From Haliotis rufescens (Eukaryota), in the NCBI RefSeq assembly GCF_023055435.1, contig NW_025963868.1, forward strand, positions 13,578,001 through 13,642,000: a stretch of DNA of 64,000 nt, given 5' to 3'. Each line of letters begins with the position of its first letter. The first letter of the stretch is position 1. A model generated the notes under the pieces. That model worked only from the letters and a program-made list of their open reading frames with translations. It ran no database searches and was not told the origin of the DNA. This document shows, piece by piece, positions 1 through 28,010 of the stretch. Position numbers and translations under genes: made by a program.

Positions 1-533
1 GACTGATTCACAGTAAAACCCTTACCATACGGTTCCGACTATTTCATGAGCATGTGTTTATGTATCACTATCAAAATAATAATGACACCAGATGTACACG
101 AAAAGATGAGCGCATACTGTCACGAACCATCCGTCACGAACACATGCAAAGGCAAGTCAATTGTTCATCTAAAACAACACACATAATTCATTCAGTTTCT
201 GAACTGTAAAAATCCTACTTCATCAAAAGTATTTTTGAAATATAATTATTATCTAAATAAATCTTCGTCGTAGTATGTGTTTTGGGTCTACCTTTCACTC
301 TGCTGTAACTGCTGCACAGGGAAGTTCAGGTCGGGGTTCGGCTTTGTTTTTATTCAAAACTGCATACAGCTCCTTGTCAACATCAGGCTCATCTGTCCCT
401 GCAGGTGTGTCCACGCAACGATGTTCTGACAGTTAACCTAATTCAGGTTAAGCATGTTCACCCTGGCTTGCCCTCCAGGCATCTCAGGAGGACCAACATC
501 TTTTAATGGGTGTTGTCGCCCTCCACAGATAGC

Positions 534-2367
534 TCACACAGTGTACATGATAATCAGGAGGAGTATCAGAAAGGAAATTCTGACAACAATGGTTGTAGCC
601 TCAGCACTGAGGTTGGTGTCTGTACTTGCAGTGGTTGCAGATGTTTCAACACCGGAGGCACCTGGAGGATGTTTAATCGAACACATGGTAAGTCACAATA
701 ATTATAGTTATAATGTGCATATTTGTAAAACACCAAATCAACCCTCAATCAAGTTAACAGTCGCATTGCTATCTCATCATACAGTGAGGAGGGGGGCGGT
801 CGAGTAGCCTAGTGGCTAAAGCGTTCGCTCGTCGAAGACCCGGGTTCAAACCCCGACATGGGTACAATGTGTGAGGCCCATTTCTGGTGTCCCCCGCCGT
901 GATATTCCTGGAATATTGTTAAAAGCGGCGTGAAAAGATACTCACTCACCCACTCACTCATCCTACAGGGTAGCCATTCACTGATGAGTTAAGAGAGGTA
1001 ACATTCTTCAACATCTCAGTCATACTATGACTGCAGTAGCTACAATACTTAATACAGGACAAGTAAGGAGAAGCATAATGGTATTATCACTCATCAAGTA
1101 CAGCGATATCTGGAATAACATAAGGTTATCAGTGTGTTAAATGTGGATATAGTTTTACTTACGTTTGAGAAGGTGTTCTGCTCCATCACAAGAAACATCC
1201 CAGGTCCGAGTGCCACAGGTAAACCTAAGCTTCACATCAGCAAAGATTAGCTCTGTTACACTGACGGAAGTGACAAACACATCATCAGTTATGTCAGTGA
1301 CAGTTGTATCCATCAGATTTCTTGCGGTGCGTCCGGTCAGAAGTTGAAGGTGGGTCACTTGAGAACAGTAATAGCCTGTAACCACTGTCCGCACAAGGAC
1401 GTCATCGCCACTTAGACCACTGGTGTTCTGGTCTGATGTTATGTTACATGAAGGAGCCTCTGAAAGTCAACCACACACCTTAAAACCTATTCTTCGTGTT
1501 ATAATCATAAAATAATGTGTGAAATATTAAACTTGATGCAGAAATGATAGGTATTCAGTGTTATTCCTTTTTTTCACATAAGGAAAAAGACATGTTACAC
1601 AGAATGTACTTCATAAGTATTCTTCAGTGAAAATAACTAATTGCTACTTACTTGCAACAGTCATGTGACAAGTGTCATGGTTAGCTTGATTTGCATCTAC
1701 ACTACATGTCCATTTCCCACCATGTGACTGCAGCACAGTGGGTATAGACAGGACACTGCATGTGGTGTTGATGACAGATGCGCTGAAGTCACCAAGTTGT
1801 ATACACTTTCCATCTGATAGGTCACACGAAGCAGCAGTATTTCCACGAGGTGTTGAGTAGGAATGGGCGTTACTGACATGCATAATATTACATGTCAGAT
1901 TTGCAGGGGCGCCTAATTCGACGACTTCTTCACAGAAGAGATCAGCTGTAAATGTGACAATACAATGGCGTCAGTGATTTCGTCAGGAATACCTTGCAGG
2001 TCAAGTTTAGAAGTATGTATAATGTGAAAAAATGTAAGGAAGCAAGGAGCACCGTTATCAACAGTGACAGAGGAGTTACTTTCATCTGGAGTACAGGTGA
2101 TTAGCTCTAAGATACTTGCCTTTAATGAACGGCATCCTCAAGCAGAATAGGAACAAGACAAGAACTATTGCTGCATGTGGACATGACCTTCTCACAAGTA
2201 GCAACTGAAAATATTGCACCAAGAAATGCTGCAATTATTATGCAGATATAAAACGAATTAACATCATAACAATCATTTGAAAAACCATTAAAGGTGTGTC
2301 GTGGAAGTGCAGTTTTCAATGTCTTAATAGTTTTTGGATTAAATAAGTAACAAATACAACTTACCAT
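534..2367 (-). pseudogene. Ig-like type-I membrane receptor, copy 1; truncated just after the TM segment (pseudogene or tailless form)
   Basis: Exons 2367-2365 (ATG), 2204-2120 (signal peptide LLLVRRSCPHAAIVLVLFLFCLRMPFIK, GC donor), 1945-1652 (Ig-like: ANLTC...SVLSIPTVLQSHGGKWTC), 1459-1163 (PSCNITS..GYYCS..FTCG..VSC), 661-534 (S/T stalk + hydrophobic segment, then TGA). All junction phases are compatible. Decayed tail sequence continues to 295. Confidence 0.8.
790..960 (+). mobile_element. SINE family A (tRNA-derived, ~170 bp, (ACTC)n tail)
   Basis: A-box TAGCCTAGTGG, B-box GGTTCAAACCC, ACTC tail. Other copies at ~11037-11205(+), 17310-17462(-), 19628-19783(-), 33234-33376(-), 35905-36056(-), 42730-42898(+), 59368-59448(+, 5'-truncated), 59615-59775(+). 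Confidence 0.88.
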
Positions 2368-6443: not shown

Positions 6444-6475
6444 GGGCAAATTCCCTGTTTCCGGGGAAAATCCCC
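6444..6475. promoter_or_regulatory. Paired NF-kB/Rel-type sites (copy 1)
   Basis: GGGCAAATTCCC (6444-6455) and GGGGAAAATCCCC (6463-6475) in a GC/CpG-richer patch, just upstream of a candidate donor CAG|GTGAAT at 6514/6515. Confidence 0.55.
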
Positions 6476-7471: not shown

Positions 7472-7522
7472 ATATTCCACAAGCGATTCGAAGGCAGAAG
7501 ATGGAGATTCGACATTGCACAG
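7472..7522 (+). pseudogene. Orphan duplicate of the candidate ATG exon (MEIRHCT) of the STAND-ankyrin gene
   Basis: TTTTACAG|ATATTCC...GAAG ATG GAG ATT CGA CAT TGC ACA G|GTAGCA, same layout as 18031-18081; no downstream NTPase exon in this copy. Confidence 0.4.
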
Positions 7523-7561
7523 GTAGCACACATGACGGCATTCAATACACACAGCATTCGT

Positions 7562-7666
7562 ATAGGGAGTATTACGTGACGTCATACTTACAGAGGGTAT
7601 TACGTGACGTCATACTTAGAGGTATTACTTGATGTCATATTATAGGGAGTATTACGTGATGTCATC
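7562..7666. repeat. Short tandem array of ~27-bp units containing TTACGTGACGTCA (CRE-like)
   Basis: Four units G(A)GTATTACGTGA(C/T)GTCATA; three units at 18120-18200 in copy 2. Confidence 0.75.
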
Positions 7667-9605: not shown

Positions 9606-10351
9606 GTATACAACAGTAGGATATGCTTAACAGGTGATTGGACCTGCACCGTCATTGAATAACGTATGACGTAACAGTCTTCTACTACAATCAAATACGG
9701 TATTCGTGTCGCCATGCATTCTAAATCATTGTGAGACTGAAAATATACATAAACACATACTATCATCCATTATTTATTTGAATGAAATAAACATTTATAC
9801 ACACTTAAATGGATCCCTCCGCTAGATTTATATCAGCCTAGTGCATGTAAAAGGAACATCCTCGAAAAACTAGAAAGTTGTTCATAAACAAATCTTATTA
9901 CCGTGTGTTCTTAAATTAAAGAGCAGGACTGATTCACAGTAAAACCCTTACCATACTATTCTGCCAATATCATGAGCATGTGTTTATGGATCACTATCAA
10001 AATAATAATGACACCAGATGTTGACGAAAAGATGAGCGCATACTGTCACGAACCATCCGTCACGAACACATGCAAAGGCAAGCCAGTTGTTCATCTAAAA
10101 CAACACAGATAATTCATTCTGGTTCTGAAGTGTAAAAATCCAACTTCATCTAAAGTATTTTTGAAATATGATGATTATTTAAATAAATCTTCGTCGTAGT
10201 ATGGGTTTTTGGTCTACCTTTCACTCTGCTGTAACTGCTGCACAGGGAATTTCAGGTCGGGATTCGGCTTTGTGTTTATTCAAAACTTCATACATTCAGG
10301 CTCATCTGTTCCCGCAGGTGTGTCCACGCAACGATGTTCTGCCTGATAACC

Positions 10352-12625
10352 TCATTCAGGTTCAACATGTTCACCCTGGCTTGCCTTGCTATTGGGGATA
10401 AAGCAGATGAATGTCCCCAGGCGGTTACGTCGTCCTCTGATGTCTTTTAATGAAGCGTAACCATATTCGTCAGGAAGATCAGGCATCTCAGGAGGACCAA
10501 CATCTTTAACTGGGCGTTGTCGCCTCCGCAGATAGATGACAGTTGTCATGATAATCAGAAGGAGTATCAGAATGGGAATACTGACAACGATGGCTGTAGA
10601 CTCAGGGCTGAGGTTGGTGTCTGTACTTGCAGTGGTTGCAGATGTTTCCGCATCGGAGGCACCTGGGGGATGTTAAATCGAGCACATGGTAAGTCACAAT
10701 ATATATAGTTATAATTTGCATATTTGTAATACAACAATTCAACCCCTTAAAGCATGCACAAAGTGCTACCTTATTTCTGGCCAATAGAGATTCCCGCCTG
10801 CCCTTAATTTTCATTCCGACGCGGCGGAATACATAAGCTTTTGTGTCTCAATTTTCCCCGCCACTAGGGAAAAGTATGGCCTGTTGTGATAAATAAAACA
10901 CAACTACGATTGCATACTCATACTTGGTGAGGTTAACTTTTCTTCAACTGTGTAATAAAAAATCATTTTCGAAGCAAAGCGACACCATCTACGTCATATT
11001 TTTTAATTCTTATAACCGCCTGATATAGTTCCAAGAGTGGGGCGGTCGAGTAGCCTAGTGACTAAAGCGTTCGCTCGTCGAAGACCCGGGTTCGAACCCC
11101 GACGTGGGTACAATGTGTGAAGCCCATTTCTGGTGTCCCCCGCCGTGATATTGCTGGAACATTGTTAAAAGCGGCGTGAAACGATACTCACTCACCCACT
11201 CACTCATCCTACAGGGTACCCATTCACAGCTGAGTGAAGAGAGGTAACATTCTTCAACATCTCAGTCATACCATGACTGCAGTAGCTACAATACTTGATA
11301 CAGGGCAAGTAGGGATAAGCGTAATGGAATACTCATCAAGTATAGAGATATCTGGACTTTGTAATAACATAAGGTTATCAGTGTGTTGAATGTGGATATA
11401 GTTTTACTTACGTTTGGGAAGGTGTTCTGCTCCATCACAAGAAACATCCCAGGTCCGAGTGCCACAGGTAAACCTAAGCTTCACATCAGCAATGGTTAGT
11501 TCTGTTACACTGACGGAAGTGACAAACACGTCATCAGTTATGTTAGTGACAGTTGTATCCATCGGATTTGTTGCGGTGCGTCCGGTCAGAAGTTGAAGGT
11601 GGTTCACTTGAGAACAGTAATAGCCTGTAGCCACCACTGCCAGCACAAGGACGTCATCGCCACTTAGACCACTGGTGATCTGGTCTGATGTTATGTTACA
11701 TGATGGAACCTCTGAAAGTCAAACCACACACCTTAAAACCTATTCTTCGTGTTATAATCATAAATTAATGTGTGAAATATTAAACTTGATACAGAAATGA
11801 TAGGTATTCAGTGTTATTCCTTTTTTTTCACATAAGGAAAAAGACATGTTACACAGAATGTACTTCATAAGTATTCTTCAGTGAAAATAACTAATTGCTA
11901 CTTACTTGCAACAGTCATGTGACAAGTGTCATGGTTAGCTTGATTTGCATCTACACTACATGTCCATTTCCCACCATGTGACTGCAGCACACTGGGTATA
12001 GACAGGACACTGCATGTGGTGTTGATGACAGATGCGCTAAAGTCACCAAGTTGTATACACTTTCCATCTGATAGGTCACACGAAGCAGCAGTATGTCCAT
12101 GAGGTGTTGAGTAGGAATGGGCGTTATTGACATGCATAATATTACATGTCAGATTTGCAGGGGCGCCTAATTCGACGACTTCTTCGCAGAAGAGATCAGC
12201 TGTAAATGTGACAATACAATGGCGTCAGTGATTTCGTCAGGTATACCTTGCAGGTCAAGTTTAGAAGTATGTATAATGTGAAAAAATGTAAGGAAGCAAG
12301 GAGCACCGTTATCAACAGTGACAGAGGGGTTACTTTCATCTGGAGTACAGGTGATAAGCTCGACGATACTTGCCTTTAATGAACGGCATCCTCAAGCAGA
12401 ATAGGAACAAGACAGGAACTATTGCTGCATGTGGACACGACCTTCTCACTAGTAGCAACTGCAAATATTGCACCAAGAAATGCTGCAATTATTATGCAGA
12501 TATAAAACGAATTAACATCATAACAATTATGTGAAAAACCATTAAAGGTGTGTCGTGGAAGTGCAGTTTTCAATGTCTTAATAGTTTTAGGATTTTCCTA
12601 TACAGGAACAAATACAACTTACCAT
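10352..12625 (-). CDS. Ig-like type-I membrane receptor, copy 2 (~330 aa; signal peptide, Ig-like domain, second Cys domain, TM, tail with YGYASL)
   Basis: Exons 12625-12623, 12458-12374, 12199-11906, 11711-11412, 10662-10352; open frame throughout with phase-1 domain exons. TM AIVVSIPILILLLIIMTTVIYL is followed by RRRQR stop-transfer; tail PDEYGYASLKDI. The stop at 10352-10354 appears premature relative to the ancestral frame. Confidence 0.82.
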
Positions 12626-15600
12626 TCCTGTATGATAGTTGAATCTTCAGAGACACATCATGATGCTGACGACACGAACTCCGCATGTGTTGAATACGCG
12701 GGTTCCATCAAAGCATACATCAACAGAAACCATACTGAATATATTTGGAGCCTTGTGAAAGTGTGTTCAAAATAAGTCAGTTTCCTGCACTATTATTACC
12801 ATCTAACAATGTCAGTTTGACTCAACACAAAATGACCCAATGCGTTGCTTCATGATAAGTTTCCCGCTGGGTGAGAATGATAACACACTCCTCTGTTATA
12901 TGCTACATGAGATGTCGGTTATGTTTTATTCATCTAAATGGGTCAACAGGAAATGGAAAATACTTTTTTAGCCAGGCCAATCAACCTTCCGTCATTATTA
13001 CACCATTTGAATATATAAATGAATACCTTCAGAATGAACAGAAAAAAACGTGGAGTCAGCAAGTTTTAAATGTTAGCCCCTTTTTTCTCTGAAAAGTGTT
13101 CAAGAGGGAATGTTCAAGTGCCATCATACTGACGAGCTTGGTAACCGGTTGTCTATATATTTTCACATATTCTTGTCTCTATAAAATAAGATCTATCAAG
13201 ACACCCATAAAAATAGCTTTACGTGTAGCAAGTACATCAACTTAATGTTGCATATTTTACAAGGCAAATGAGCATGATATATGAAATTGCATATTCAGTG
13301 TGTGTACAATTAAAGAGTGACTACATTCCACATTCCATTGCACTTTTCAATCAGTGTCAAGATCAGTAGCCAGTTTCCTGTGTGAAACTAAAACGTTGCT
13401 CTGGTCTAATTAAAGAGTCCGTTAAAATAATAAACGACACCATAAACAACAAAAACGTTCGCTTAAACGTAATAATCATTTTTATGACATAATGAACGAC
13501 AGCAGGTAGAATTACATGTGATGAGACACAAGGCACGAGACAGACTTGCGAAGGTTATGAGAATATATATAAACCAATACATTATACAATGCAGTGAGCA
13601 GGCAATGACAGTAGTGTCGGGACAACTTGAATCCAGTGTGTTAGGAGTGAGTGAGTTGGGTTTTAACAGTATTCCAGTTATATCGCGGCGTGTCAGCTTA
13701 ATGTGGGAGGAAAACCCGAAGTGATGCAGGTCTTAGACGTTTACCACTTCGGTGAAACCGACGAGCACGGGTATGTTGCTGACAAACCTACATACATAAT
13801 CGGGGCGAAACGGGATTCGAGCCCACAATCATGGGTTTCTGGCGTGTCGGGATTCAATTTCAATGTCTAGGCCAAAACATGTCTTTAGTAGTTGACTCAA
13901 CATACATAACTCCTACTGAATATCATTACACCTCAACCCGACTTCCTTGTGTATACAGTAATGATGAGGGCATTTAGCTGAAACAACTGACACTAGCCTT
14001 CCGTGTCCACGGGAGATTTGCAAAACAATTTCCTTGTTGAACACATTAAGCAAGTAGCGAATTTGTTTCACAAATAGTAACCAAAGCTAGCTGCCCTGAA
14101 AGTGAAATATGAACTTCAACAAGCAATAAGTGGTTAAAACAATAATAATATAATGTTTTAGGTAACTGTTTTCCACAAGGTAAAATGTATCATAACAAAC
14201 GGCTCAGGCTCGTGTTGAGACGGCTTCTGTTTAAATTATTGTACTGTATTATATCCATGTCAAAGTGTATTGTCAATGCAACACAAGTGATACTAACTTC
14301 ACCTTCACCTCACATTAGGATTAGACACATTATGGGAAACAAACCCAGAGCATAACACTTGTGTGTGTTCTCCCTTCACAAACATGAAACCATTTCCAGG
14401 AAACTGCGCGTGAAATACCAGCTGTATCTCACTGTACTGTGTCGCTCCTAATCGTATCAACACAAACTCAATAATATGACAGTACATTCATGATCAATTC
14501 CCTTAATTTGACAGCTGAGGGGACCAATTGTATATTTTCAAAGTGTGTCACAAAGCAATTGTACTGCTGAATCTAAATGCTGTTATTGTGGTGGTGACAA
14601 CAGTGCTCACTCACAACAATGAAGGACACTGATTGTGTGTAAAATATATTTCCATTGCTTTTCCTTAAAGTGGGCAGGCAACAACTGAACAGGAGATCGT
14701 GTTCATGTGGGTGCTCGAATATCTGATCCAATCTTCTCCATTTCCTGACAGATCTAAATTACAATTACCGACTCCATGAAAGGCATCTGCACGGAGAGCT
14801 GAAGGTCGGGGGCTCGAAAGATAGTTAAAAGATGGTACTTGTTGTTACCCTGCCTGAAGCTCGGCATTAAGGGGCTGAAACAAGGACTGGTCGCCTCGGA
14901 GTAGTATGTGTTCAACACAATGAATCAAAACGAGAAACAGTAAGACATATCTATGCAGAAATATATTTACGACGAGAGATATAATGTGTATTGCATCATA
15001 CATGCTTCTTCAATGGCATTGTAAATAAGTGACACCGTCAATAGTACAAGTGTTATGTGGCACCGCTGCACTGCAACTGTGTCGGGTAATGGGGAACGAA
15101 AGAATAAATACACACAGTTTCCCTGACATTGATCTGTAGCTATAAATGTCACATTCAGGACTATTTGAAGTATATAGTTTCACCACGTGACTTGCGATTT
15201 CCTTGCAAATAATCTTTAATTATGGATTTTCATCATTCAGCGAGAATAATCATATAGTTTGTACATGTGCATGGACTTAATATATGTCATCCTATGTTTT
15301 CGGCTTCAACGAACAAGTTGACTATTTACTTATTACTGGGAATTTCACTAGACAACTTCGACTGATGCTTTTGATCAAAGTTGGTTTGGATGGTATTTTT
15401 ATTATATCAGCGTGTGCATGTTTAAAGTGTACGTTAAAATTAATCGTTGCAACATCTTCATTTCATCCATATAGCGACGCCTGCTTAGGTGGCAAAAAAC
15501 ACCACAGACAATCCCAAGTGTTCTATACGGCTTCTGACACAGACATTGATATGACATCACAATTTTCCATTTTCTGAATACAGCATCCAAGTCATTGCTG

Positions 15601-16820
15601 TTAAACCATGCTGTCAAAATCATTTCAGAGACATTCTGTGAGTGAGTTCAAATTTAACATTGTAAAAACAGCATCATTTTATACACATAGCGTTGTCTAC
15701 TTTCATGACAACAGGAGCAGCAGAGGCAATCCTACGGCTTTTGGCATTCTGCCTCAAATAGGACAACGTCATGATCTCCTGGCAGTAAAGAGATTCAGTT
15801 CAGTTTTAGATATTATCCTCCCAAGTATCAACTCCTCAATAACATCAACAAACCTGAAATCTTGAAACCTGAATTGAGATACAAAATCTTATTTATTCCG
15901 TCAGAATGAAAATTCAGGACGGGCGGGAGATTGGAAACTCAGAAAAAATACGGACAGCCTTGGTGGTACCCTATAATCAATAACGCCGCACTCAGCAATA
16001 TTCCAGCTATATGTCGGCGGTCTGTAAATAATCGAGTCTGGACCAGACAATTCAGTTATTAATATCATAAGCATCGATCCACGCAATTTGGATCGATGAC
16101 ATGCATCAACCAAGTCAGCGGGCCTGACCACCCGATCCCGTTAGTCGCCTTTTCCGGCAAGCATGGGTTGCTGAAGACCTATTCAACCGTGGAATCTTCA
16201 CGGGTCTCAAGGCGGATTTGCTGATTTTTTGGTGCCATGAATATCATTAGGGTGCTCTTATGCATGGAGTGAATACCGGAAATTGGTTTATCCTTCATCT
16301 TGATTGGCGCCGTGTTATTCCCTATTGTATATCAGTACTTCCTTTTTTGATACCACATATTCGATTTTGAGATGTCAGTAAATCGAATATGAGATATAAC
16401 AAAATGAAGTTTTGATATTAAAAAAGTCGATGTTTGTTCATCATTAACTAATTTTACACACACAAAAGCGAAACCCATTATTGGTATCAAGAAATCGAAT
16501 TTTTTACATCAATAATGTACGTCTGGCCGGCATTTATTTTACGGATGCATTTCATTGTGCGGGTGTTTGAGCAATAACGAAAAGGTTTCAATACGTCGTG
16601 CCACGTTCTTTGAAGTGGTGAGGATTTTCTCTGAACATAATAAAAAGCGAATCAAGATAATATTTCAGATAATTTGAGACAAACTATCTAGTACAAAATA
16701 CCTTTCTAAGTTCTATATACACACACAGAGCAAACAAACTCATACTCTGTCAAAACTTGAACCCATAACGCGGCTCTAAAATCTACCCGGTTGGTCGCGG
16801 GGTAAGGGAGGTAACCATGT

Positions 16821-16852
16821 GGGCAAATTCCCTGTTTCCGGGGGAAATCCCC
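16821..16852. promoter_or_regulatory. Paired NF-kB/Rel-type sites (copy 2); candidate promoter of the STAND-ankyrin gene
   Basis: GGGCAAATTCCC (16821-16832) and GGGGGAAATCCCC (16840-16852), followed by candidate donor CAG|GTGAAT at 16891/16892. Confidence 0.55.
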
Positions 16853-17309
16853 GTCGTTTCCACATCACGAGCTCACGCGCTGCTCCGGCAGGTGAATCAT
16901 ATATCATAATTTCTACATTCTGGTCGTTCTAAGGTACCAATATTTGGACTGTCAAACTCGTTTCGTCCAAAACATCGTATGTAGCTTTTTAACGGTGTTA
17001 TATGCAACGACTATCATGTTTGTATGACGATAAGACCCAAGGTCAAACCACGCTGTCTGTACAGGACTGCATCAAGTACGTTATTATCGCCTCTCGTTGA
17101 AGTGCCTAATGAATACTACAGCCAGCTTGTGTTTTATTCATATACACTGTGCTCTTAGAGCAGACTAAACTACTCTCGAAATATACAGCCGCGCTACCTG
17201 AACATTGTCTTTCGTACATATTGAAAAGAGCCGCTGTAAAATCATAAGTGACGGGTGAGGGACGCGATCAGCATTGTCTTCCTGCTTCCTATCGTTTCTT
17301 ATTGGTTAC

Positions 17310-17462
17310 TGAGTGAGTGAGTGAGTATCGTTTTACGCCGCTTTTAGCAATATTCCAGCAACATCAGAAATGGGCTTCACACATTGTACCCATGTCGGGA
17401 ATCGAAACCGGGTCTTCGGCGTGACGAGCGAACGCTTTAACCACTAGGCTACCCGACCGCCC
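17310..17462 (-). mobile_element. SINE family A, inserted after the segmental duplication
   Basis: Flanked by direct repeat TTATTGGTTACTGA; absent at the equivalent site (~6920) of copy 1. Confidence 0.9.
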
Positions 17463-18059
17463 AATTATTGGTTACTGAATGACTTTGTTTTGTTGTTAAC
17501 GTCGCACTCAGCAATATTCCAGCTATATGACGGCTGTCTGTAAATAATCGAGCCTAATCCAGACAATTCAGTGATTGATATCATGAGCATCGATCCACGC
17601 AGTTGGGATACGATGACATGCATCAACCAAGTCGGCGGGCATCAAAGTAGGAATATTTTGTGCAAAAAATAAATGTTTATTTTCTTGATATGACGTCTCT
17701 TTATTCGTGTATTAGGTACATCATGAAATCTACATATTATGATTTCAAATAATTGTGTAAGTCACACAGATGAGGACCATCACTTAGTCTATTATAAGAT
17801 CGTATCAGTCAATAGCATATAAGAAACTGGGTACTGAAAATCAGATGGTTATAGATTATGTATGAAATTAGGAGAAATTATTCTGTCGAATTAACAATTA
17901 TGATTAATTCCAAACAATGAAAGGAAATGTTTGCACAATTTACGCATCGAATATCCTTAATCAATGTAGCGCAAACCTACCCTCAAGTACACCTAAGATA
18001 TAATATTTATTATAAAAGTTTCTTTTACAGATATTCCACAAGCGATTCAAAGGCAGAAG

Positions 18060-20466
18060 ATGGAGATTCGACATTGCACAGGTAGCACACATGACGGCAA
18101 TCAATACACACAGCATTCGTATAGGGAGTATTACGTGACGTCATACTTACAGAGGGTATTACGTGACGTCATACTTACAGAGGTGTTACATGATGTATCA
18201 CTCTCCTACCCAGAGTTCCTTGCGCCCGGCAGCCAGCCATCATAGTATGAAATAACACGTCTTTTCACTTGAGTGAAATAACTCTTAATGCCGGAACTAC
18301 TTTCGGCCTGCCTCAATGAACCTAAGGTTTTCAGCGAAACACCGTAAAGCTCTGAAGGAACATACGTAATAAATAGAACATTTGTCTTTTCTTGTCAAAT
18401 ATTTATCTCACCTCGACATCGTATCCCAATTGCGTGGATCGATGCTCATGATGTCAATCACTGGATTGTCTGATCCAGACTCGATTATTTACAGACCGCC
18501 GTCATAAAGCTGGACTATTGCTCACTGCGGCGTTAAACAACAAACAAACAAACAAACAAACAAACAAACCTGGCAAAGCAACGCCACTTATGAACACATC
18601 AACTTTGTCAGATCACTCGATGAGATAAACTTCTTATCTGACAAGAAAATACAGAAAAAGTTTATGTATTTGTTTATTTACCTTGTCCACATGAATGTCA
18701 ACAGTGACGGACTTGAACGTCGCATGGGGCACGGTGTTGGCCCAGTCGGCTGAGGCGCCGCAATTGGCTGTGCAGGGTTGCGACCCTTGAGCATACCAGA
18801 AACCTATGATCATGGGTTCGAATCCCTGATTATGTTTCTAGGTTTGTCAGCAACATACCCGTGCTCGTGGGTTTCACCAAAGTGGTAAACGTCTGAGACC
18901 TGCATCACTTCGGGCTTTCCTCCCACATTAAGCTGACACGCCGTGATATAACTGGAATACTGTGAAAAGCGGCGTTGAACCAACTCACTCATTAAAACGT
19001 CACAACTATTGGGACATCATCACGCATCACGTTGACAATGCTGTCTTGTTTATAGAGGGGAACACCATTATAACCTTTAGGCATACAGGTTAAGGAAATG
19101 CGACGTAAAGGAGCGTGTCTGCCACTAAATGCAATACCTCGATGCTTCAGTGATCAGTTTTTATTGTGTCTCAGGCGCTTACAAATTGAGAATGAACTAA
19201 GTTTGTGATGATACAGTGATCAGTTTTCTATTATGTCTCAGGCCCTTACAAATTGAGAATGAACTAATTTTGTGATGCTTCAGTGATCAGTTTTTATTGT
19301 GTCTCAGGCGCTTACAAATTGAGAATGAACTAATTTTGTGAATCGTCAGTGAACAGTTTTCTAATATGTCTCAGGCCCTTACAAATTGAGAATGAACTAA
19401 TTTTGTGATGCGTCAGTGAACAGTTTTCTAATATGTCTCAGGCCCTTACAAATTGAGAATGAACTAATTTCCCTTGAGTCCTGTGTGACGCCAAAAATAT
19501 GTCTGCTTGAAACATATTTTTTTCAAAATTGTTACATACAACTGGCATTTCTATTCAGGATCTATTCTAAAAATTCAAATCTACATCTGATATACGCAAA
19601 TGGCTTCTGAGCATGTTCAGTAATAATGAGTGAGTGAGTATGGTTTTACGCCGCTTTTTTAGCAATATTCCAGCAATATCACGGCGGGGGACACCAGAAA
19701 TGGGCTTCACACATTGTACCCATGTCGGGAATCGAACCCGGGTCTTCGGCGTGACGAGCGAACGCTTTAACCACTAGGCTACCTGTTCAGTAATATGACA
19801 ATTCTTGAAAATTACCTGAAGCATGCCCCATATCGCCAGCCTGGGACCCCATTGTTTTGCGTGGGTCCCCCAAAATGTATTGCGAGTCTGCAGGACACGT
19901 AACGAGAAAGACTAGGTAAATACATATGTGATGACCGGTCATAAGGACGACATCAAACATCAAACTAACTGACAATTAAAGAACTACGCTGTGAAAGTGT
20001 GTTTCCGACACCATGTGTTTGCTTTGTTTGTTGTTTAACGCCGCAATCAGTAATATTCCAGCTATTTGAGGGCGGTCTGTAAATAAACGATTCTAAACCA
20101 GACAATCCAGTGATTTTCACCATGATCATCGATCCAAGCAATTGGTATATGATGACGTGCATCAACCAAGTCAGCGAGTCTGACCACCCGATCCCGTTAG
20201 TCCCCTCTTACAAGCATAGTCGCCTCTTACGGCAAGTACGGGTTGCGGAAGACCAATTCGAACCCGGATCTTCAAATGTTTTTGCAAGACTGACGAGTCC
20301 ATCCAAGCCCTACCGGCCACGAGCTTAGCTTAAGACAACGAATCACAAGTCGTCAACTAATATAATACCGCAACCAACCATTTGAAGAAAGTTGTCAGAT
20401 GCAGCAAACATGTCTAACATTTCTTCTTCTTTTTTCTTTCAGATCGACGTTTCGAAAATATTTGTG
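18060..20466 (+). CDS. Candidate short 5' coding exons of the STAND-ankyrin gene: 18060-18081 (MEIRHCT) and 24-bp microexon 20443-20466 (DRRFENIC)
   Basis: Strong polypyrimidine acceptors at 18030 and 20442; donors GTAGCA (weak) and GTATGT; both exons end in phase 1, matching the phase-1 acceptor TTTTTCAG|AT at 23213/23214. Confidence 0.45.
19141..19470. repeat. Minisatellite, 5 x ~66 bp
   Basis: CAGTGA(T/A)CAGTTTT...TGTCTCAGGC(G/C)CTTACAAATTGAGAATGAACTAA repeated head to tail. Confidence 0.92.
19628..19783 (-). mobile_element. SINE family A with target-site duplication
   Basis: TGTTCAGTAATA on both flanks. Confidence 0.88.
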
Positions 20467-20945
20467 GTATGTACCATCTTCCAAAACTGGCTTCCACAGA
20501 ATATTTCGCTCGGTTGAGTTCAAACATTGCTCAGGAGATACAGCTTCAGTGAAAGTGCATCACAATGCTTTGCACACCATAGCGATGTCATTCGTTACCA
20601 GTGAAAAAATTAAATTAAAGAAAATCATGATTTTGGGGGCTAATTAAATACAGCCTTTGACGGGTGCCCACCTAACAAGGAAATACCTGGAATACACCAT
20701 CAACGGCTGTAACACCTGTTGATATGTTACTGTACGTCGATGATAAAATGTTGTAAAAGGAACCTGATAAACACACTTTCTTACTTCAATCTAGAAGGAT
20801 TTTATGCTTTAATGCATCGAATGCCTTTAAAAAGTCGATAAAAAGACAATAAAAACCTTCCCTTCTTTTTACAAGAATATTTTGTAATTTTAAACTGAAG
20901 TGTAAAACTATGGTCAACGGTTGAGTAACAAGCTATTAAGCCAGC

Positions 20946-21230
20946 GGGGGCACGGGGGCCTAGTCGTCTAAAGCGCCGGGATTCGCTGTGCAGAGTTGCG
21001 TCCCTTGGACATGCAAGAAACCTATGATGGTGGGTTCGAATCCCGGTTCGCCCAAATTATGTTTCTAGGTTTGTCAGCACCATACCCGTGCTCGTGGGTT
21101 TCACCAAAGTGGTAAACGTCTGAGACTTGCATCACTTCGGGCTTTCCTCCCACATTAAGCTGACCACATCACGCCGTGATATAACTGGAATAATGTTAAA
21201 AACGGCGTTAAACCCAACTCACTCACTCAC
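20946..21230 (+). mobile_element. SINE family C (~280 bp, tRNA-like head with widely spaced A/B boxes, (ACTC)n tail)
   Basis: GGGCACGGGGGCCTAGTCGTCTAAAGCG...GGGTTCGAATCCCGG...CCCAACTCACTCACTC. Other copies ~13645-13850(-), 18726-18992(+), 38250-38518(-), 43060-43285(+), 63053-63323(+). Confidence 0.85.
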
Positions 21231-23213
21231 TATAAAGCCAGCCTCTGACTCATTAAGAATATTATTACTTTCACACCATTTATATAATCATTTGCTTAAA
21301 ACAGATGTAACAATTTACATATAGAGTTTGATAAGGAAGTACCTCTGTCATTATTATTGTCTGATTTATGTTTATTTATGCTTTTACCCCATGAAGTGGA
21401 CGAAATATCAGCAGTGAAATTTCTGTTGTACAATGTAGTGAATATAGCAGTTACCAACACAATAGAAGATATGATATACCATTAAATTCTAGAGTTTGTG
21501 GAACAGTTCTTTTTGTTCTGATCTGGATTGTCTGTCTACAATAGGGTGGCCATGTTGCGTATGCAGTAGACTGTCACTTGTGTGTTATGGAGACTGGAAC
21601 TGTTCAAACCGTTGCCAACATGATATCTGTTTTGAAATACCTTCACCAAATATATTTTCCTAAATGATTCTCCAGAGGAGAAAAGGATCAGATCTAGCTG
21701 GTACTAATTTTTGCAATTTGAACGCATGGTTATCTTTTGGTGACCTGGGAATAACGTATGTGTCTCAAGGATAGACAGAAAATCTAAGTTAAAATCCTGC
21801 ATGTAGGCAAGAAAGACTTTCATTGTAACATTTGACCTGTTATGATCCGGAGTAGAATAGGTCTCCAGCAACCCATGCTTGTAAAAGGCGACTATTCTTG
21901 TAGTAAGAGGCGACTTACGGAATCGGGTGGTCAGGCTCGCTGGCTTGGTTGATGAACTTCATCGATCCCAATTGCACATGTTTTCCATCTTGATCCCATG
22001 TAAACTCTTCCTACTTTCATCAGGTTGGCTGAACGTCCCGATTTTAATTCCAAATTGTCAGGTTTCTATCCCCATGTCAGACAACGTCAAAAGTACGACC
22101 TGCTCGCTCGCTCAGTCATGCGCCCTCCGTTTCCAATACAATGCAATATATATTATTTATGTGGCTAGACGTAATAATCTATATCAACTATGTTCACGGA
22201 GCCTCATGGTGGCACCATGATTGTTCCTGGCATAACTTCAGAATGGTTTCATACGAAATATCTGACATTATCCTGAAGGGATCATACGCAATCACCGAAA
22301 AACAACCCACAGAAACGGCCCTTCTGTATTCTGAAACGAAATTGCATCTTTCAATACATATTCATAAAGACATCTCGACATTAAGTTCGTGATTCATAAC
22401 GTTCATGTTTATGCATGGCGCACAATGTGGATGTTTCCTTGGAGCATGATACTTGCACACGTGTTATTCATGTGATCCGCAAACAGTGATTGTTTAGCTA
22501 ACAGGTGCTCAAGTCTTTGAATGACATTTAGAAGTGATGTACATAAGGTAGAGAATTTATGGATGTCAACTTCTTCATTATGTGGAGTATATACTTACTC
22601 CTTCATCAGGTGCATACATGCTATGAAGCAGAGAACAGACATGTGTACCTGTAAGAACAACAAAAATTAAACGATAACAAAACTGGAAACATTACAAGAG
22701 AAGCCAACCGTTAATTGGCCTTGATTGGTGATTAGCAATGGACAAGTGGAAGCCAACACTAAACAGTTTATTAACACTGATAGTTGACACTTGATAGCGA
22801 TGGACAACTGGAAGCCAGGCATTGGCAATGGGCAAACTTGACCTAATTAGCACTGATAGGTAATAGTGGCAATGGACAAATGGAAGCAAGCTTGATAATT
22901 CGCACAGTCAAAAATTCAAGTCGCAAGCACTGGGCAGATAGGGTCACGGTTCATGGCTGGCTGTTATCTCCTGGCTGCCCTTTACTTTTTTCCGGTAGTA
23001 TATAAACATCTGTGTCCAATCTAAAAATGTAACTTTATTATACATATGTGTCTGGACATGCTCAAGTGAAGGTAATTAGCCAACACTTGAACATGGAATC
23101 GAATTTATTTTGAAAACGTCTTCTTTACTCCAAATACAAAATGTATAAAGCAAACATTAAATATAATTTCTTTCAAGTCACGAATGATAGAGACGTGTCT
23201 GTTTCTTTTTCAG

Positions 23214-26200
23214 ATTCAACGAAGGCACTCCTCACTCATGAAGACACAGGGTATGTATCAACCTATTATGAGAGGTCAGCTATGAGGCTGTTGACAGAAC
23301 ATGGCCGGATATTCATCAAAGGGAGATCTGGTTCTGGCAAGTCAAGGCTTGGTATCAGACTTCTGGCAACACTATCTGAAAACAAAAGTAGAACACCTGT
23401 TTTACTAACCTCAGCTGAAGAATGGAAATTGATACCCAAAACAACTGCCCATGATCGACGCAGGTACATTGTGATGTTAGATGATGTATTTGGATCCAGT
23501 AATTTTGTCCCTTCAAGTGTAGATGGATGGAAAAGAACATTTGATATTATGTGGCCATCAATTGAATCAAAACATATTTTTCTTGTTATCACATCAAGAC
23601 CAGAGATAAGTATTCAGTGTGAGAATGAACTGAAGAAATATGACTTGATGCAGGACATGCCTTGTGTCACGTTGGATGAGGGAGAATATATACTTCAGGA
23701 GAGTGAAAAAAGAAAAATGCTGCAAACTATCTGTCCAACCAAAAGTGGCTTGATGCCAAAAGAAATACAAGATATTGCTTCAGCAAGAGCAACTCTTGGT
23801 TTTCCTCAGTGTTGCAAGTTTTTTGCAAGCAGTAAGCAAGCACAGTCTAAAGGAGTGAGCTTCCTTTTTCAGGCCGCATGACTATGTCTTGGAGGAGATA
23901 GACAGACTAAAAGAAAGCGACAGTTTAGGGTACCTTGTTCTACTTCTGGTACTCATGCAAAATGGATGCATGAAAAAAACACTACTAGAAAGGAGAACAA
24001 AAGAGTTAAGCAATATGCTTGAAACTTTAAAGGATGTGTGCGCAGACATGCCTGTATTGTTTCCAAGTCTTGTTAGAATCCGAGAAAAAGCTGATGCACT
24101 CTGTGGTGTATACTTAGTACTCAGTGCAGACGGATATAAGTTTCAGCATCAGTCAATATCAGAGTGTGTATTCATCACCTTGTCAAACATCGACACCAAC
24201 TTATGCATCGAAGCATGTCCTGTACCACTGCTTTTAGAGCTCATTCAAACGAGAGTAAATGATCAAAATGAGAATGAAATAGTGATATTATTGACTGAGG
24301 ATCACTATCCTGCGTTTGCTGATAGAATTACAAAACTATTGTTAACCTCAACTTCATCAAAAGAAATCTTGAACCATACCGCTTTTCAGGATGATGACTT
24401 CATTCGGTGTTTGGTATCCAAATGGACATCTGAAGGTAAAGTGCCAATTATTTGGCAGCATAACTTTGAATCAAAAACACAAATGTGGTTCACAAGTCAG
24501 CAACCAACGTCATTTAGCATCAATGTGGCATTGTTTGAATTTCAGAAAATTGTTCCGTTTCTGATTCTAAAGAATATCAAAACGCTTGTGGACACTTTGA
24601 TTGCATTGAATAAAGATGAAGGTTCAGATGTCCTCCAGGAGTGTTTACCTTGTGCAGTTTATGTTGGCAGAAACGACCTTGTGAAGACCCTACTTGATTA
24701 TGGAGCCACACCAGATGACAGTTTGTCCAGCAAGACATATAGACACCGATGTGGCAGATACCATTTTCAAAGTTGTTGTGGCAGTGCACGAGGAGGTTGA
24801 TGGAGCGGATCCCGATAAAAAGTTGACATGGGATTCCATATCCAATCTAAGAGATCTCTTCTGGCTAGCAGTAATGAATGGAAACGTACATATTGTACAA
24901 TTACTTGTCAAAAGGTTAAAGAGTGAAACAAACAGTTTGACAATCTTCAAGAATGCCTTGGTAGGTCTTGTCAAGGAACTTAGTAAAGGCCATAGATGTC
25001 CAGTATTTACGCCCTATAACATGACACACCTGAGTGAAATAATTAAAATTCTCCTGGGCACAGGATGCAAGGTAGATCTTGAGTATCTCATTTTGCAGGC
25101 AGCAACCCACACTGATGCTACTGCGTTACGTCTTTTTCTTGCACAAGGTGTACATGTGGATGATATATATGTTGCAAAAGAAGACGTTTACAGCACCGAA
25201 GATTATTATCCAACACCTTTACAGCAAGCAGCAGCTTATGGAGGGGAGGATTGTCTGGAAGAAATCCTCAGTTGTTCACATCTAATTAGCAGTAACCATT
25301 CATTATTGCACACTGCAGTTAAACATGGTAACACTGAGTGTGCGTCCTTGCTCATTCAGAAAGGCGTCCCAGTCAATACACTGGACAGAAATGGCAATGC
25401 ACCTCTTCATGTTGCTGTCAAACACAACCAGTTGAAAAGTATTGAGCTACTACTTTCAAAGCATGCATCTGTTGACATAGAAAACAGTGATGGGTGTATA
25501 CCATTATTATGTATGGAATATGCATCCCCTCCCGACATAAACATTGTTGCAACTCTTATAGATGCAGGAAGCAATATTAATGAGGTTGATAAACAACAAA
25601 GGACACTACTTTATAAAGCAGCAGAGTACGGTGACCTGGCTACTGTGAAGTACTTATGCAACAAAGGCGCCAACGTGAATATTGACACACAACAGTTCAA
25701 CATTTCCTGTATGGCAATCAAAGATGAACAAAGGCTGTGTAAGAGAGTTATTCTTGCTGCGTGCAGAAATGCTGATATTGACACCGTAAAGTTGCTCTGT
25801 GAACATGGTGCTGATGTTGACATAGTTGACGTCAATGGGGAAACAGTAATACACAAAGCTGCTGCATCCCGAATCGATGCTGTAGAGAAACTTCAATATC
25901 TTCTGGACATCAAACAGGTGCCTCTTAGTATACCAGACAATTCTGGAAGGACGGCCTTATTTCCAGCAGTGATGTCAGCTTTACAAACTGGGTATTTGGA
26001 AGTTCTGCACTTTCTTGCGTCTCGAAAGATGGACCTCAAGCAAAGGGATACTTATGGGGACAGTTTACTGTTATATGCATTAACCCTAAACCCATTGGAT
26101 TCAAAGCATACTGCATCAGAAGGCTTCATTAACCTGATGCTAAGCCATGGAATTGATCCAAACATAAAGAACCTACAAGGAAGAGCAGTGCTTCACTATG

Positions 26201-28010
26201 CTGCAGTCAGGATGACAAAGGACAAACTAACCTTGCTCCTAGACGGAGGTGCTGATCCGTGTGTTCAAGATGAAACTGGACAGACTGTGCTCCATTATGC
26301 TGTAAAGAAACGAAGTGTTGACAATGCGAGGTTGTTCTTAGAAAAGGGTGCCGATCCATGTGTTCAGGACCAAGACGGTAAAACAGCCCTTCACTTTGCA
26401 GTAGAATTGAAAGATTCTGACACTGTTAAGCTGCTCCTTAATAAAAGAGCTGACCCTTGTGTATCCGATAACTATGGCAGGGATGCCTTGTTTTACGCTG
26501 TAAAAGGCCAGAGTAGTCTCATCATGAAATTACTCCTGCAAAATGGAGCCAATCCTTGTGTACAGGATAGGTATGGCACTACAGTACTTCACATTGCTGC
26601 GAGGTGTCTTGATAAAGAAAACGTCATGCTACTGCTGGAACATAAAGCAGACCCACATACTCAAGATCAGCATTTCCAGACGACACTCCATTTTGCTGGC
26701 CGCAATACAAACAGTGAGGTTGTCAGATTACTTCTGGAGAGAGGTGTTGATTCCTTTGTGCAGGATGACAGTGGAATGACGGCTCTTCACTGTGCAGTAT
26801 TAAACTGCAACACTGAAAGTGTTGAGTTACTTCTGGAAAGATGTCCAGTAAGGGATATACAAGATCGAGAAGGAAAGACGCCACTTCACCATGCAGCGGA
26901 AACAGAATACACAAATATTGTTAAGCTTCTCTTAGAAAAAAACTTCGACCCCAGTGTACAAGACCGTTGTGGTGAAACATCCCTTCACTATGCAGCAAAG
27001 AGAGGGTATAATGAGAGTGTTGAGTTAATTGTGGAAAAAGGTGTTGATGTGTCTATCAAAGACCAAGAAGGCATGACAGCACTTCATCATGTGGCAGATA
27101 TCAGTAAGGAAAGTGTTCAACTACTGCTGGTACATGGTGCTGATTCCAGTGCAAAGGATCATATGGGGAGAACTCCTCTTCACCTGGCAACAGAAGGAGG
27201 ATGCAATGATAGTGTAAAGCTGCTTTTGGAGAATGGTGCAGATCCTTGTGGAAAGGATGATTTGGGCAAAACACCACTTCAATAAGCAGCAATTCACAAT
27301 GAAGATATCATTAATATGTTGTTTGAGAAGGGTGCAAACGCACATGTGCAGGACAAAGAAGGCAAAACGCCACTTCACTATGCATCAGATTGTAATTTGT
27401 GGAATTGTGCTCATCTGCTGTTAGAAAACGGAGCTGACCCCTGCCGACGGATCAACAAGGCAAAACAGCCCTGCACACTGCAGTTGAAGCTGAGTTTAGC
27501 TTTGATGTATTTGCGTACACCCACACGTCATACCGGTACGTAACGAAAAGAAAGAAGAAGAAGAGTATTGTTAAGCTCCTCATTGATAAAGGGTCCAATC
27601 CATGTATGAGGGACAAACAAGGAAGAACTGCACTTCATTATGCAGCTGAGAGAGGTTGCAGTGATAGCTTTCATCTTTTATTGGGAAATAATCCTATGCC
27701 ATTCATCAAGGACGAACAGGGAAGAACTCCTCTGCACTGTGCAGCAGCCAAAGGAAGCAGGGACAATGTTGAACTGCTCTTGGATAAAGGTGCAGACCTA
27801 TGTGCAAAAGATCAACAGGGAAGAACTCCTCTGCACTGTGCAGCAGAAGCCGAAAGTGATTGCAGTGAAATTGTTAAACTTCTCCTTGAGAAAGGAGCTG
27901 ATCCCCTGATGATGGATCAGCAAGGCATGACAGCCCTTGACTATGCAACTAGATGTGGGAACACTGCCAGCGTTAAGCTATTGCATGGAAGGGTTTCTGA
28001 GAAACAGTGA
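23214..28010 (+). pseudogene. STAND-class P-loop NTPase (nSTAND3-like) + helical region + ~25 ankyrin repeats; single ~4.8 kb exon with 3 frameshifts and 1 nonsense codon
   Basis: Walker A GRSGSGKS (23321-23344), Walker B YIVMLDDVFG, sensor-1 FLVITSR, GxP motif GFPQCC, winged-helix-like YKFQHQSI; then 33-aa repeats D..G.T.LH.AA....VKLLL..GADP. Breaks at ~23870, ~24720, TAA 27283-27285 and ~27445. The joined frame would be ~1600 aa. Confidence 0.9.

What the first reader, a model, noticed from the sequence alone, without database searches (positions are those of the whole stretch)
10352..28010. Head-to-head pair: surface Ig-like Tyr-motif receptor and intracellular STAND NTPase-ankyrin sensor, with kB sites between them
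Seen: a minus-strand membrane receptor (ATG 12625) and a plus-strand STAND-ankyrin gene (candidate ATG 18060, main exon 23214) diverge from an interval holding two adjacent kB-type palindromes (16821-16852). Established: STAND NTPase + repeat-sensor proteins are the NLR-type architecture, divergently transcribed immune receptor pairs are known in plants, and Ig receptors with YxxL tails are typical immune regulators. Inference: this may be a co-inducible extracellular/intracellular immune module of a gastropod; I know of no description of it. The receptor may instead use its own promoter (AP-1/ETS-like motifs near 12780-12830), so shared regulation is not shown.
Basis: partly seen in the sequence, partly recalled or inferred. 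Interest (0 to 1): 0.8.

Follow-up and report, generated by a model that had tools for sequence, protein, structure and literature searches.

The report
Neighbouring abalone Ig-receptor and decayed STAND-ankyrin genes
In the red abalone genome, a small two-Ig-domain membrane-protein gene and an NLR-like NTPase-ankyrin gene do lie head to head, but the NTPase gene is broken in this assembly, the receptor has no start codon for its signal peptide, and nothing shows that the kB-like motifs regulate either gene.

Summary
Both genes exist. The window is Haliotis rufescens, contig C90.

**Receptor (minus strand).** It is RefSeq LOC124121864. It has two Ig-like domains, a stalk, a TM helix and a short tail with one YxxL. 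The proposed ATG at 12625 is unsupported. The RefSeq protein starts at an internal Met and has no signal peptide. A tandem copy 10 kb away is dead.

**STAND gene (plus strand).** It is nSTAND3 plus an ankyrin array. ATG 18060 is right, and a 24-nt exon at 20443-20466 was missed. The main exon carries three frameshifts and an in-frame TAA relative to intact paralogues. An independent DNA run confirms the first frameshift. Transcripts of other animals lack it. The gene is therefore a transcribed null allele or pseudogene.

**kB motifs.** There is one canonical kB match, which is chance level. The motif pair was copied with the recent 8.5-kb tandem duplication. It is absent at paralogous loci.

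The same head-to-head adjacency recurs at two other loci (P about 5e-4 to 2e-2). Regional co-amplification explains this as well as function does.

Co-regulation was not tested. The scan had already noted this STAND-ankyrin family elsewhere in this genome. Interest is low to moderate.

The parts
10352..10662 (-). Receptor A last exon. It encodes the S/T-rich stalk, TM helix (AIVVSIPILILLLIIMTTVIYL), RRRQR stop-transfer and a 55-aa tail with DEYGYASL, then the stop codon.
   Evidence: It is identical to the C-terminus of RefSeq XP_046340896.2. The TM helix is at 205-225 in the model.
11412..11711 (-). Receptor A second ectodomain exon, Ig-like and C2-type-like, phase 1-1.
   Evidence: The model is all-beta with pLDDT 85-94, and two-Ig-domain PDB chains match across both domains. 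There is no Pfam hit.
11906..12199 (-). Receptor A first ectodomain exon, Ig V-like, phase 1-1.
   Evidence: Ig_3 is sub-threshold at E 0.0014. The model has pLDDT 90.8 and matches VHH and Necl-2/CRTAM V domains at TM 0.75-0.82. At least 78 paralogous exons exist in the genome.
12374..12458 (-). Signal-peptide-type exon of receptor A (LLLVRRSCPHAAIVPVLFLFCLRMPFIK+G), with a GC donor. It has ATA where the H. cracherodii relative has ATG.
   Evidence: aligned to XP_071094819.1. The RefSeq H. rufescens protein does not include it.
22593..22619 (-). Candidate first coding exon of the receptor (ATG..MYAPDEG + GTAAGT), inside a dispersed repeat and inside STAND intron 2. It is inferred only from the H. 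cracherodii model.
   Evidence: The region is a repeat of more than 3000 copies, but this exact 27-mer is unique in the genome.
16821..16852 (.). Two adjacent kB-like palindromes, GGGCAAATTCCC and GGGGGAAATCCCC. Only the second contains the canonical 10-mer.
   Evidence: A 95%-identical copy lies at 6444-6475 in duplication unit B.
18031..18081 (+). STAND exon with ATG 18060 (MEIRHCT, phase 1). Its 5' limit is not known, and an acceptor-like site lies at 18030.
   Evidence: It matches the N-termini of XP_067678956.1 (H. asinina) and XP_046554913.1 (H. rubra).
20443..20466 (+). STAND 24-nt exon (DRRFENIC, phase 1-1) with AG/GT borders.
   Evidence: It matches 7 of 9 residues of DRRFPNMCD in the H. 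asinina orthologue.
23214..28010 (+). STAND main exon: nSTAND3 NTPase (Walker A GRSGSGKS), a helical middle region and about 25 ankyrin repeats. It is disrupted at 23863/4 (+1 C), 24721/2 (frame change, 4 paralogue residues missing), 27283-27285 (TAA) and about 27439-27447 (frame change).
   Evidence: The transcribed contig and the 23863 polymorphism are.
9927..18399 (.). Tandem duplication unit A. It is 88-96% identical to unit B at 1-7947 and contains receptor A, the kB pair and STAND exon 1.
474..2198 (-). Receptor B, the tandem twin. Ig1 is 96% and Ig2 89% identical to receptor A. Its TM exon has a stop inside the TM segment, and about 94 nt that encode the Tyr-motif tail are deleted.
7472..7522 (+). 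Orphan copy of STAND exon 1 (ATG 7501) in unit B.

Best explanation
The locus is an ordinary piece of a birth-and-death immune-type gene cluster on a red-abalone chromosome. Two families that appear largely confined to abalones in the searches run here have been amplified in the same regions:
- a two-Ig-domain type I membrane protein, with at least 80-140 exon matches in the genome;
- an nSTAND3 NTPase-ankyrin, NLR-like protein, with at least 60 copies.

Here one member of each lies in divergent orientation. The receptor unit, together with 5.8 kb upstream of it that includes STAND exon 1 and the kB-like pair, was recently duplicated in tandem.

In the assembled haplotype all copies show decay:
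- The STAND gene is a transcribed null allele or pseudogene, with three frameshifts and one nonsense codon.
- Receptor B is dead.
- Receptor A has lost the Met codon of its signal exon. It is annotated without a signal peptide.

The kB-like palindromes are unproven sequence motifs, not a demonstrated shared enhancer.

Shown: gene structures, folds, lesions, the duplication, transcription of the STAND exon, and recurrent adjacency. Inferred: immune function of either family, and that the adjacency reflects block or regional duplication rather than functional coupling.
For: Identity and annotation:
- The STAND gene is nSTAND3 plus Ank.

Decay of the STAND copy:
- Intact paralogues have one open frame of 1400-3000 aa, while the window copy changes frame three times and reads through a TAA.
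- The extra C at 23863 is present in independent DNA run X2. It is absent in RNA-type contigs X15 and X17.
- No H. rufescens or H. cracherodii protein of 475-2933 aa was found for this locus.

Transcription:
- A 4575-nt RNA contig is spliced at 23213/4.

Receptor:
- The Ig folds are.
- The start codon is lost.
- Receptor B is dead.
- Cytoplasmic tails vary across the family and share no Tyr motif.

Duplication and motifs:
- The tandem duplication includes the kB pair and STAND exon 1.
- The kB consensus is at chance level and is absent or unpaired at paralogous loci.

Adjacency:
- Between the receptor and STAND genes at the paralogous loci there are only satellites and a retroelement.
- In the STAND tree the window copy groups (weakly, 85/52) with unlinked C157 copies, and the linked receptors are not one clade.
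Against: - Head-to-head adjacency of the closest receptor paralogues with STAND genes recurs at 2-3 further places. That is more than uniform chance predicts: 0.15-0.2 expected, 3 seen.
- Transcripts of other individuals or species lack lesion 1, so an intact allele may exist. Lesions 2-4 could not be checked in reads.
- A pair of adjacent kB-like palindromes is uncommon, in about 1% of simulated windows.
- It lies 1.2 kb upstream of the STAND ATG exon.
- The H. cracherodii model suggests that the 5' ends of the two genes interleave. That could allow shared regulation.
Confidence: 0.7

Rival explanations
1. The Ig receptor and the STAND-ankyrin protein form a co-regulated extracellular/intracellular immune module, driven by a shared Rel/NF-kB-responsive divergent control region.
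For: - The genes are divergently oriented.
- A kB-like pair lies 1.2 kb upstream of the STAND ATG exon.
- The adjacency recurs at C591 and C90:10.95 Mb in the same orientation.
Against: - The STAND copy is broken here, and the receptor has no signal-peptide start.
- The kB motifs are not conserved at the paralogous pairs.
- The canonical motif count is at chance level.
- The 5' exons are at least 5.5 kb apart, so this is not a classical bidirectional promoter.
- The trees of the two families are not congruent.
- No expression data exist.
Confidence: 0.08
2. The STAND gene is a functional, polymorphic sensor. The assembly captured a null haplotype, while an intact haplotype segregates and supplies the transcripts. 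This is presence/absence-type polymorphism, as is typical of NLR genes.
For: - RNA-type contigs of two runs lack the extra C at 23863.
- Three RNA-type runs share 23626 T>G, while DNA run X2 matches the assembly at both sites.
- The 4575-nt transcript contig covers most of the main exon.
- The orthologues in H. asinina (1676 aa) and H. rubra are annotated as coding.
Against: - Lesions 2-4 were not examined in any read set.
- No H. rufescens or H. cracherodii protein model of 475-2933 aa was found for this gene.
- The window copy is only 70-74% identical to the two orthologues, which are 83% identical to each other.
Confidence: 0.3
3. The two genes are overlapping antisense transcription units. 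The receptor transcript starts in STAND intron 2 near 22.6-23.1 kb, so STAND exons 1-2 lie inside the receptor's first intron. Any coupling would come from transcriptional interference or a shared region near 22.6-23.2 kb, not from the kB sites.
For: The N-terminus MYAPDEG of the H. cracherodii relative XP_071094819.1 maps to a 27-mer with an ATG and a GTAAGT donor. That 27-mer is unique in the H. rufescens genome and lies at 22619-22593 on the minus strand.
Against: - The exon lies in a dispersed repeat of more than 3000 copies.
- It comes from a computed gene model of another species.
- The H. rufescens RefSeq protein starts at an internal Met, which argues that this exon is not joined in frame there.
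- No read evidence was available.
Confidence: 0.15
4. The frame changes are assembly errors and the STAND gene is intact.
For: Lesions 1 and 3 lie in or beside short homopolymer runs.
Against: - Independent DNA run X2 carries the same extra C at 23863.
- Lesion 2 removes about four codons and is not in a homopolymer.
- The TAA is a substitution.
Confidence: 0.04

Closest known systems
Lineage-specific expansions of STAND NTPase + repeat (NLR-like) genes in marine invertebrates; Pfam nSTAND3 (PF20720). The nSTAND naming comes from Kaur et al. 2021, eLife, PMC8195603.
   Same: It has a P-loop STAND NTPase followed by a helical region and a long repeat array. It belongs to a large family of tandem clusters with many decayed copies (paper read).
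   Different: The repeats are ankyrin, not LRR. The N-terminus is only about 16 residues from two tiny exons, with no Death, TIR or CARD effector domain. This particular copy is disrupted.
Plant paired NLRs in head-to-head orientation (RGA4/RGA5, RRS1/RPS4; reviewed in PMC9528088 and PMC4246468)
   Same: Two immune-type genes are divergently oriented and genetically linked, and the arrangement is seen at more than one locus.
   Different: Plant pairs are two NLRs, usually with a short shared promoter, and their functional interdependence is proven. Here one partner is an Ig-type membrane protein, the 5' exons are at least 5.5 kb apart, and no functional link is shown.
Clustered, rapidly evolving Ig-superfamily surface receptors with short signalling tails (vertebrate LRC/KIR, fish NITR). 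The hemITAM DEDG-YxxL of CLEC-2/Dectin-1 is cited from my own knowledge.
   Same: The architecture is signal peptide, V-like Ig, second Ig-like domain, stalk, TM and short tail. The family forms large tandem arrays with pseudogenes. The tail motif DEYGYASL resembles a hemITAM.
   Different: There is no detectable sequence homology beyond the Ig fold. The tails of the family are not conserved and most lack Tyr motifs. Signalling is untested.

Membership tests
nSTAND3 STAND NTPase (PF20720) | Match to the family profile above the curated threshold | tested here: met
   72.3 bits against a cut-off of 27.2, E 4.6e-20, covering profile positions 1-151 of 155.
nSTAND3 STAND NTPase (PF20720) | Intact Walker A and Walker B motifs in an open reading frame | tested here: inconclusive
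   GRSGSGKS and IVMLDD are present. However, the frame breaks 3' of the NTPase at 23863 in the assembly and is continuous in RNA contigs.
NLR-type architecture (NTPase + C-terminal repeat sensor + N-terminal effector) | C-terminal repeat array in the same gene | tested here: met
   The Ank families score E 1e-70 to 1e-136. The arrangement is collinear with intact 1705- and 1765-aa paralogues.
NLR-type architecture (NTPase + C-terminal repeat sensor + N-terminal effector) | N-terminal effector or adaptor domain | tested here: not met
   Only MEIRHCT and DRRFENIC precede the NTPase. The orthologues likewise start about 16 residues before it.
Immunoglobulin superfamily surface receptor | Ig fold with B-F strand cysteines | tested here: met
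   Pfam Ig_3 is only sub-threshold, 19.5 bits against 30. The predicted structure has pLDDT 90.8 and matches V-type Ig domains. C18, W78 and C80 are invariant.
Immunoglobulin superfamily surface receptor | Signal peptide and a single TM helix (type I topology) | tested here: inconclusive
   The TM helix is present. Family members have signal peptides. This gene's signal exon has no ATG, and the RefSeq protein starts inside Ig1.
ITIM/ITAM/hemITAM-bearing immune receptor | Conserved tyrosine motif in the cytoplasmic tail | tested here: not met
   There is a single YASL in receptor A. It is deleted in receptor B. The tails of 20 family members are unalignable and mostly lack such motifs.
Bidirectionally regulated (paired) immune genes | Recurrent head-to-head linkage of the two families | tested here: met
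   Three loci show it, or two if sister STAND clades are counted once, against 0.15-0.2 expected.
Bidirectionally regulated (paired) immune genes | Shared promoter or correlated expression | not testable with these tools
   The single read-laying run covered 17950-23949 only. No start-site or challenge data are available.
NF-kB/Rel-responsive enhancer | kB sites enriched over chance and conserved at related loci | tested here: not met
   There are 6 matches against 3.7 expected in the window. At the paralogous pairs there are none (C591) or three scattered single sites (C90). The pair is copied within a 95%-identical duplication, which says nothing about constraint.

The most novel reading that the evidence does not exclude
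An Ig-type surface receptor gene and an nSTAND3-ankyrin gene form an old, selectively retained head-to-head pair in abalones. The pair is kept at three loci and has interleaved 5' exons. In haplotypes where both are intact, it acts as a two-part extracellular/cytosolic immune unit. The reference merely carries a decayed allele.
Probability: 0.07. Interest if true: 0.75.

Novelty: new member of a known kind. Interest (0 to 1): 0.3.

Why it matters
If the pairing were functional, it would be the first animal counterpart of plant-style genetically paired immune receptors, and one that links a surface receptor to a cytosolic STAND sensor. As it stands, the locus shows something more ordinary. Abalone immune-type gene families expand and decay in shared genomic neighbourhoods. 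Reference assemblies can carry null alleles of transcribed NLR-like genes. Short transcription-factor motifs and single tyrosine motifs are weak grounds for inferring regulation or signalling. The recurrent adjacency is the one lead worth a cheap follow-up, by synteny across Haliotis genomes.

Tried and rejected
**Rejected readings**
- I first read 27285-27606 as an intron. It is continuous ankyrin coding sequence with an in-frame TAA and a frame change.
They are rejected in favour of the exon used by the H. cracherodii model.

**Searches that led nowhere**
- I looked for the small STAND exons in paralogue upstream regions by DNA similarity and found nothing.
- I looked for STAND remnants beside the unlinked receptor loci C591:0.8 Mb and C90:14.07 Mb and found none.
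- Pfam found nothing in the other ORFs of the window or in the 316-aa ORF upstream of the C591 STAND gene.
- Literature searches for nSTAND3 or abalone STAND-ankyrin work gave nothing specific.

- RefSeq accession order was too loose to infer adjacency in H. asinina.

**Method note**
I searched my own spliced models exon by exon and did not join exons. The only full-length receptor sequence I used is the RefSeq protein as a tool returned it.
Full report
**What the window is**

RefSeq hits whose contig lengths equal those of this assembly identify the genome as Haliotis rufescens, the red abalone (32,727,429 bp for C90 and 49,480,045 bp for C605). The window is C90:13,578,001-13,642,000. It contains no N.

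**The receptor**

Three exons lie on the minus strand, each with AG/GT borders and phase 1 at both ends:
- 12199-11906 encodes a 97-residue domain.
- 11711-11412 encodes a 99-residue domain.
- 10662-10352 encodes a Ser/Thr-rich stalk, a 22-residue hydrophobic helix, RRRQR and a 55-residue tail containing DEYGYASL.

I searched them exon by exon and did not join them myself. A whole-library search with the first exon returned RefSeq XP_046340896.2. This is 'uncharacterized protein LOC124121864' of H. rufescens, 280 aa, and it joins exactly these exons.

Pfam gives only a sub-threshold Ig_3 hit for exon 1 and nothing for exon 2. An AlphaFold model of exon 1, built on 14 paralogous exons, has pLDDT 90.8. 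It matches V-type Ig domains (nanobodies, Necl-2/CRTAM) at TM 0.75-0.82. A model of the RefSeq protein shows two beta-sandwich domains and a TM helix. It is matched over both domains by CD58, CD4 D1D2, amphioxus IgVJ-C2 and B7-H6. 'Surface Ig-like receptor' therefore holds.

Three things do not hold.

1. ATG 12625 is unsupported. The RefSeq protein starts at an internal Met at 12137 and has no signal peptide. The closely related H. cracherodii protein XP_071094819.1 begins MYAPDEG|LLLVRRSCPHAAMVPVLFLFCLRMPFIK|A.
   - Its second segment is window exon 12458-12374, which has a GC donor.
   - Both window copies read ATA (Ile) where H. cracherodii has the Met that would start a compact signal peptide.
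2. The tyrosine motif is not a family feature. In an alignment of 20 family proteins, the tails are unalignable and most lack such motifs.
3. The gene has a tandem twin at about 474-2198. That copy has a stop inside the TM segment and has lost about 94 nt that encode the Tyr-motif tail.

The first segment of the H. cracherodii N-terminus, MYAPDEG plus a GTAAGT donor, maps to window 22619-22593 on the minus strand. This lies inside a dispersed repeat of more than 3000 copies. The exact 27-mer is nevertheless unique in the genome, because the repeat consensus has no ATG there. If that exon is used, the receptor transcript starts inside STAND intron 2, 594 bp from the STAND main exon. The 5' parts of the two genes would then interleave. 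This rests on a computed model of a sister species. The H. rufescens RefSeq protein argues against in-frame use of that exon here.

**The STAND gene**

Pfam calls nSTAND3 (72 bits) followed by ankyrin families at E down to 1e-136.
- The exon ending at 18081 encodes MEIRHCT in phase 1.
- I found a second exon of 24 nt at 20443-20466, encoding DRRFENIC, with a polypyrimidine tract, AG and GT.
- Together they reproduce the N-termini of the likely orthologues. These are MEILGGTDRRFPNMC|DST in H. asinina XP_067678956.1 and MEILQCTGRRFQNMC|DST in H. rubra XP_046554913.1.

The gene therefore has no N-terminal effector domain.

The 'main exon' from 23214 is not one open frame. Against two intact paralogues (1705 and 1765 aa in one frame each), the coding sequence shows four lesions:
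- It changes frame at about 23863.
- It changes frame again at 24721/2, where four paralogue residues are missing.
- It reads through a TAA at 27283-27285.
- It changes frame again at about 27439-27447.

There is no intron at 27285-27606.

**Read evidence (the only read-laying run, window 17950-23949)**

- A 4575-nt contig of RNA-type run X15 (organism B) matches from 23213 onward and carries 29 further letters that do not match the intron. It is therefore spliced at the predicted acceptor, and the main exon is transcribed.
- Shorter contigs of two organism-A runs also lie on the exon.
- At 23863, X15 and X17 each lack one letter, which fuses the first two frames. The independent DNA run X2 agrees with the assembly.
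- All three RNA-type runs also share 23626 T>G, which X2 lacks.

The simplest reading is two haplotypes. One is a broken haplotype, seen in the assembly and in X2. The other lacks at least lesion 1 and dominates among the transcripts. Lesions 2-4 lie outside the stretch laid and remain unchecked in reads.

Word searches with the H. asinina orthologue (length range 922-2933 aa) and with the 863-aa ankyrin piece (475-1510 aa) found no H. rufescens or H. cracherodii protein for this locus. That is consistent with annotation as a pseudogene.

**The interval and the kB motifs**

GGGCAAATTCCC and GGGGGAAATCCCC are at 16821-16852. Only the second contains the canonical GGGRNWYYCC. That consensus has 6 matches at 4 places in the window against 3.7 expected. 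A pair of relaxed palindromes within 40 bp occurs in about 1% of simulated 64-kb sequences, but that pattern was chosen after seeing the site.

The pair is part of a recent tandem duplication. Unit A at 9927-18399 is 88-96% identical to unit B at 1-7947. The unit carries the receptor, the kB pair (copy at 6444-6475) and STAND exon 1 (orphan copy at 7472-7522). The stretch from 18.35 to 22.75 kb is packed with high-copy repeats.

At the paralogous receptor-STAND loci there is no kB consensus between the genes at C591. There are three scattered single sites at C90:10.96 Mb.

**Recurrent linkage**

The NTPase domain has at least 62 matches and the middle domain at least 68. The receptor exons have at least 78 and at least 139 matches.

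The closest receptor paralogues (53-65% identity) lie at five loci. At three of these, a receptor gene sits head to head beside an nSTAND3-ankyrin gene:

| Locus | Distance |
|---|---|
| Window | 11 kb |
| C90:10.947/10.974 Mb | 27 kb |
| C591 (two copies of one recent duplication) | 38 and 47 kb |

Only satellites or a retroelement lie between the genes. Receptor-family territory, taken as ±50 kb around each match, covers 0.43% of the genome. That predicts 0.15-0.2 linked STAND loci. P is about 5e-4 to 1e-3 for three loci, and about 1e-2 to 2e-2 if the sister STAND clades C591 and C90:10.9 Mb are counted once.

Several points weigh the other way:
- The window STAND copy groups (weakly, 85/52) with two C157 copies that have no receptor nearby.
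- The linked receptors do not form a clade.
- Both families are concentrated in the same few regions, for example C90 from 10.8 to 15.5 Mb.

Regional co-amplification or block duplication explains the pattern as well as selection for a pair does.

**Verdict**

The architectural interpretation is right. The 'co-inducible module with kB sites' is unsupported, and in this haplotype the genes are decayed. Earlier notes of this scan on other pieces of the same genome describe the same STAND-ankyrin family 'in all stages of life and decay', which fits. Nothing here called for a referred step.

Noticed in passing
window 18136-18143 and 18164-18171: Two perfect CRE palindromes (TGACGTCA) lie inside a roughly 28-bp direct repeat, 55-90 bp downstream of the donor of the STAND ATG exon. 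An X15 contig of depth about 36 covers about 18050-18150 and runs past the donor.
   Followed up: no
window 23626 and 23863: All three RNA-type runs (two studies of organism A, one of organism B) show T>G at 23626, and two of them lack one C at 23863. The DNA run and the assembly do not. This may be a second haplotype, or preferential survival of transcripts from an intact allele. It is not resolved.
   Followed up: partly
window 22480-22900 (minus strand): A dispersed repeat with more than 3000 first-look candidates has a consensus ATTTATTCACCTGATGAAGGAGTAAGT that carries a strong donor site. The window copy alone has acquired an ATG, and it matches the first coding exon of an H. cracherodii receptor model. 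This is possible exonisation of a transposable element.
   Followed up: partly
window 7472-7522: An orphan, fully conserved copy of the STAND ATG exon, with its acceptor-like and donor sites, lies in duplication unit B, between the two receptor genes.
   Followed up: partly
window 50258-51412 and 51949-53363: There are two long minisatellite arrays, with 17-bp and 21-bp units. The second is strongly G-rich on the plus strand (GC skew 0.5).
   Followed up: no
L025 (C90:10950643-10952856, minus strand) and P0001/P0002: The STAND paralogues at C90:10.9 Mb have a 700-900-residue N-terminal coiled-coil-like region. It is encoded by a tandem-repeat ORF (MDRTTDNLTGESDT units) upstream of the NTPase exon. 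A H. cracherodii family member (P0025) carries a caspase (PF00656) hit in the precomputed Pfam list.
   Followed up: partly
L014-L016 and L019-L022 (C591:1.385-1.414 Mb and 1.463-1.497 Mb): Tens of kilobases of satellite arrays that are open in several reading frames fill the space between the receptor and STAND genes at the C591 loci.
   Followed up: no
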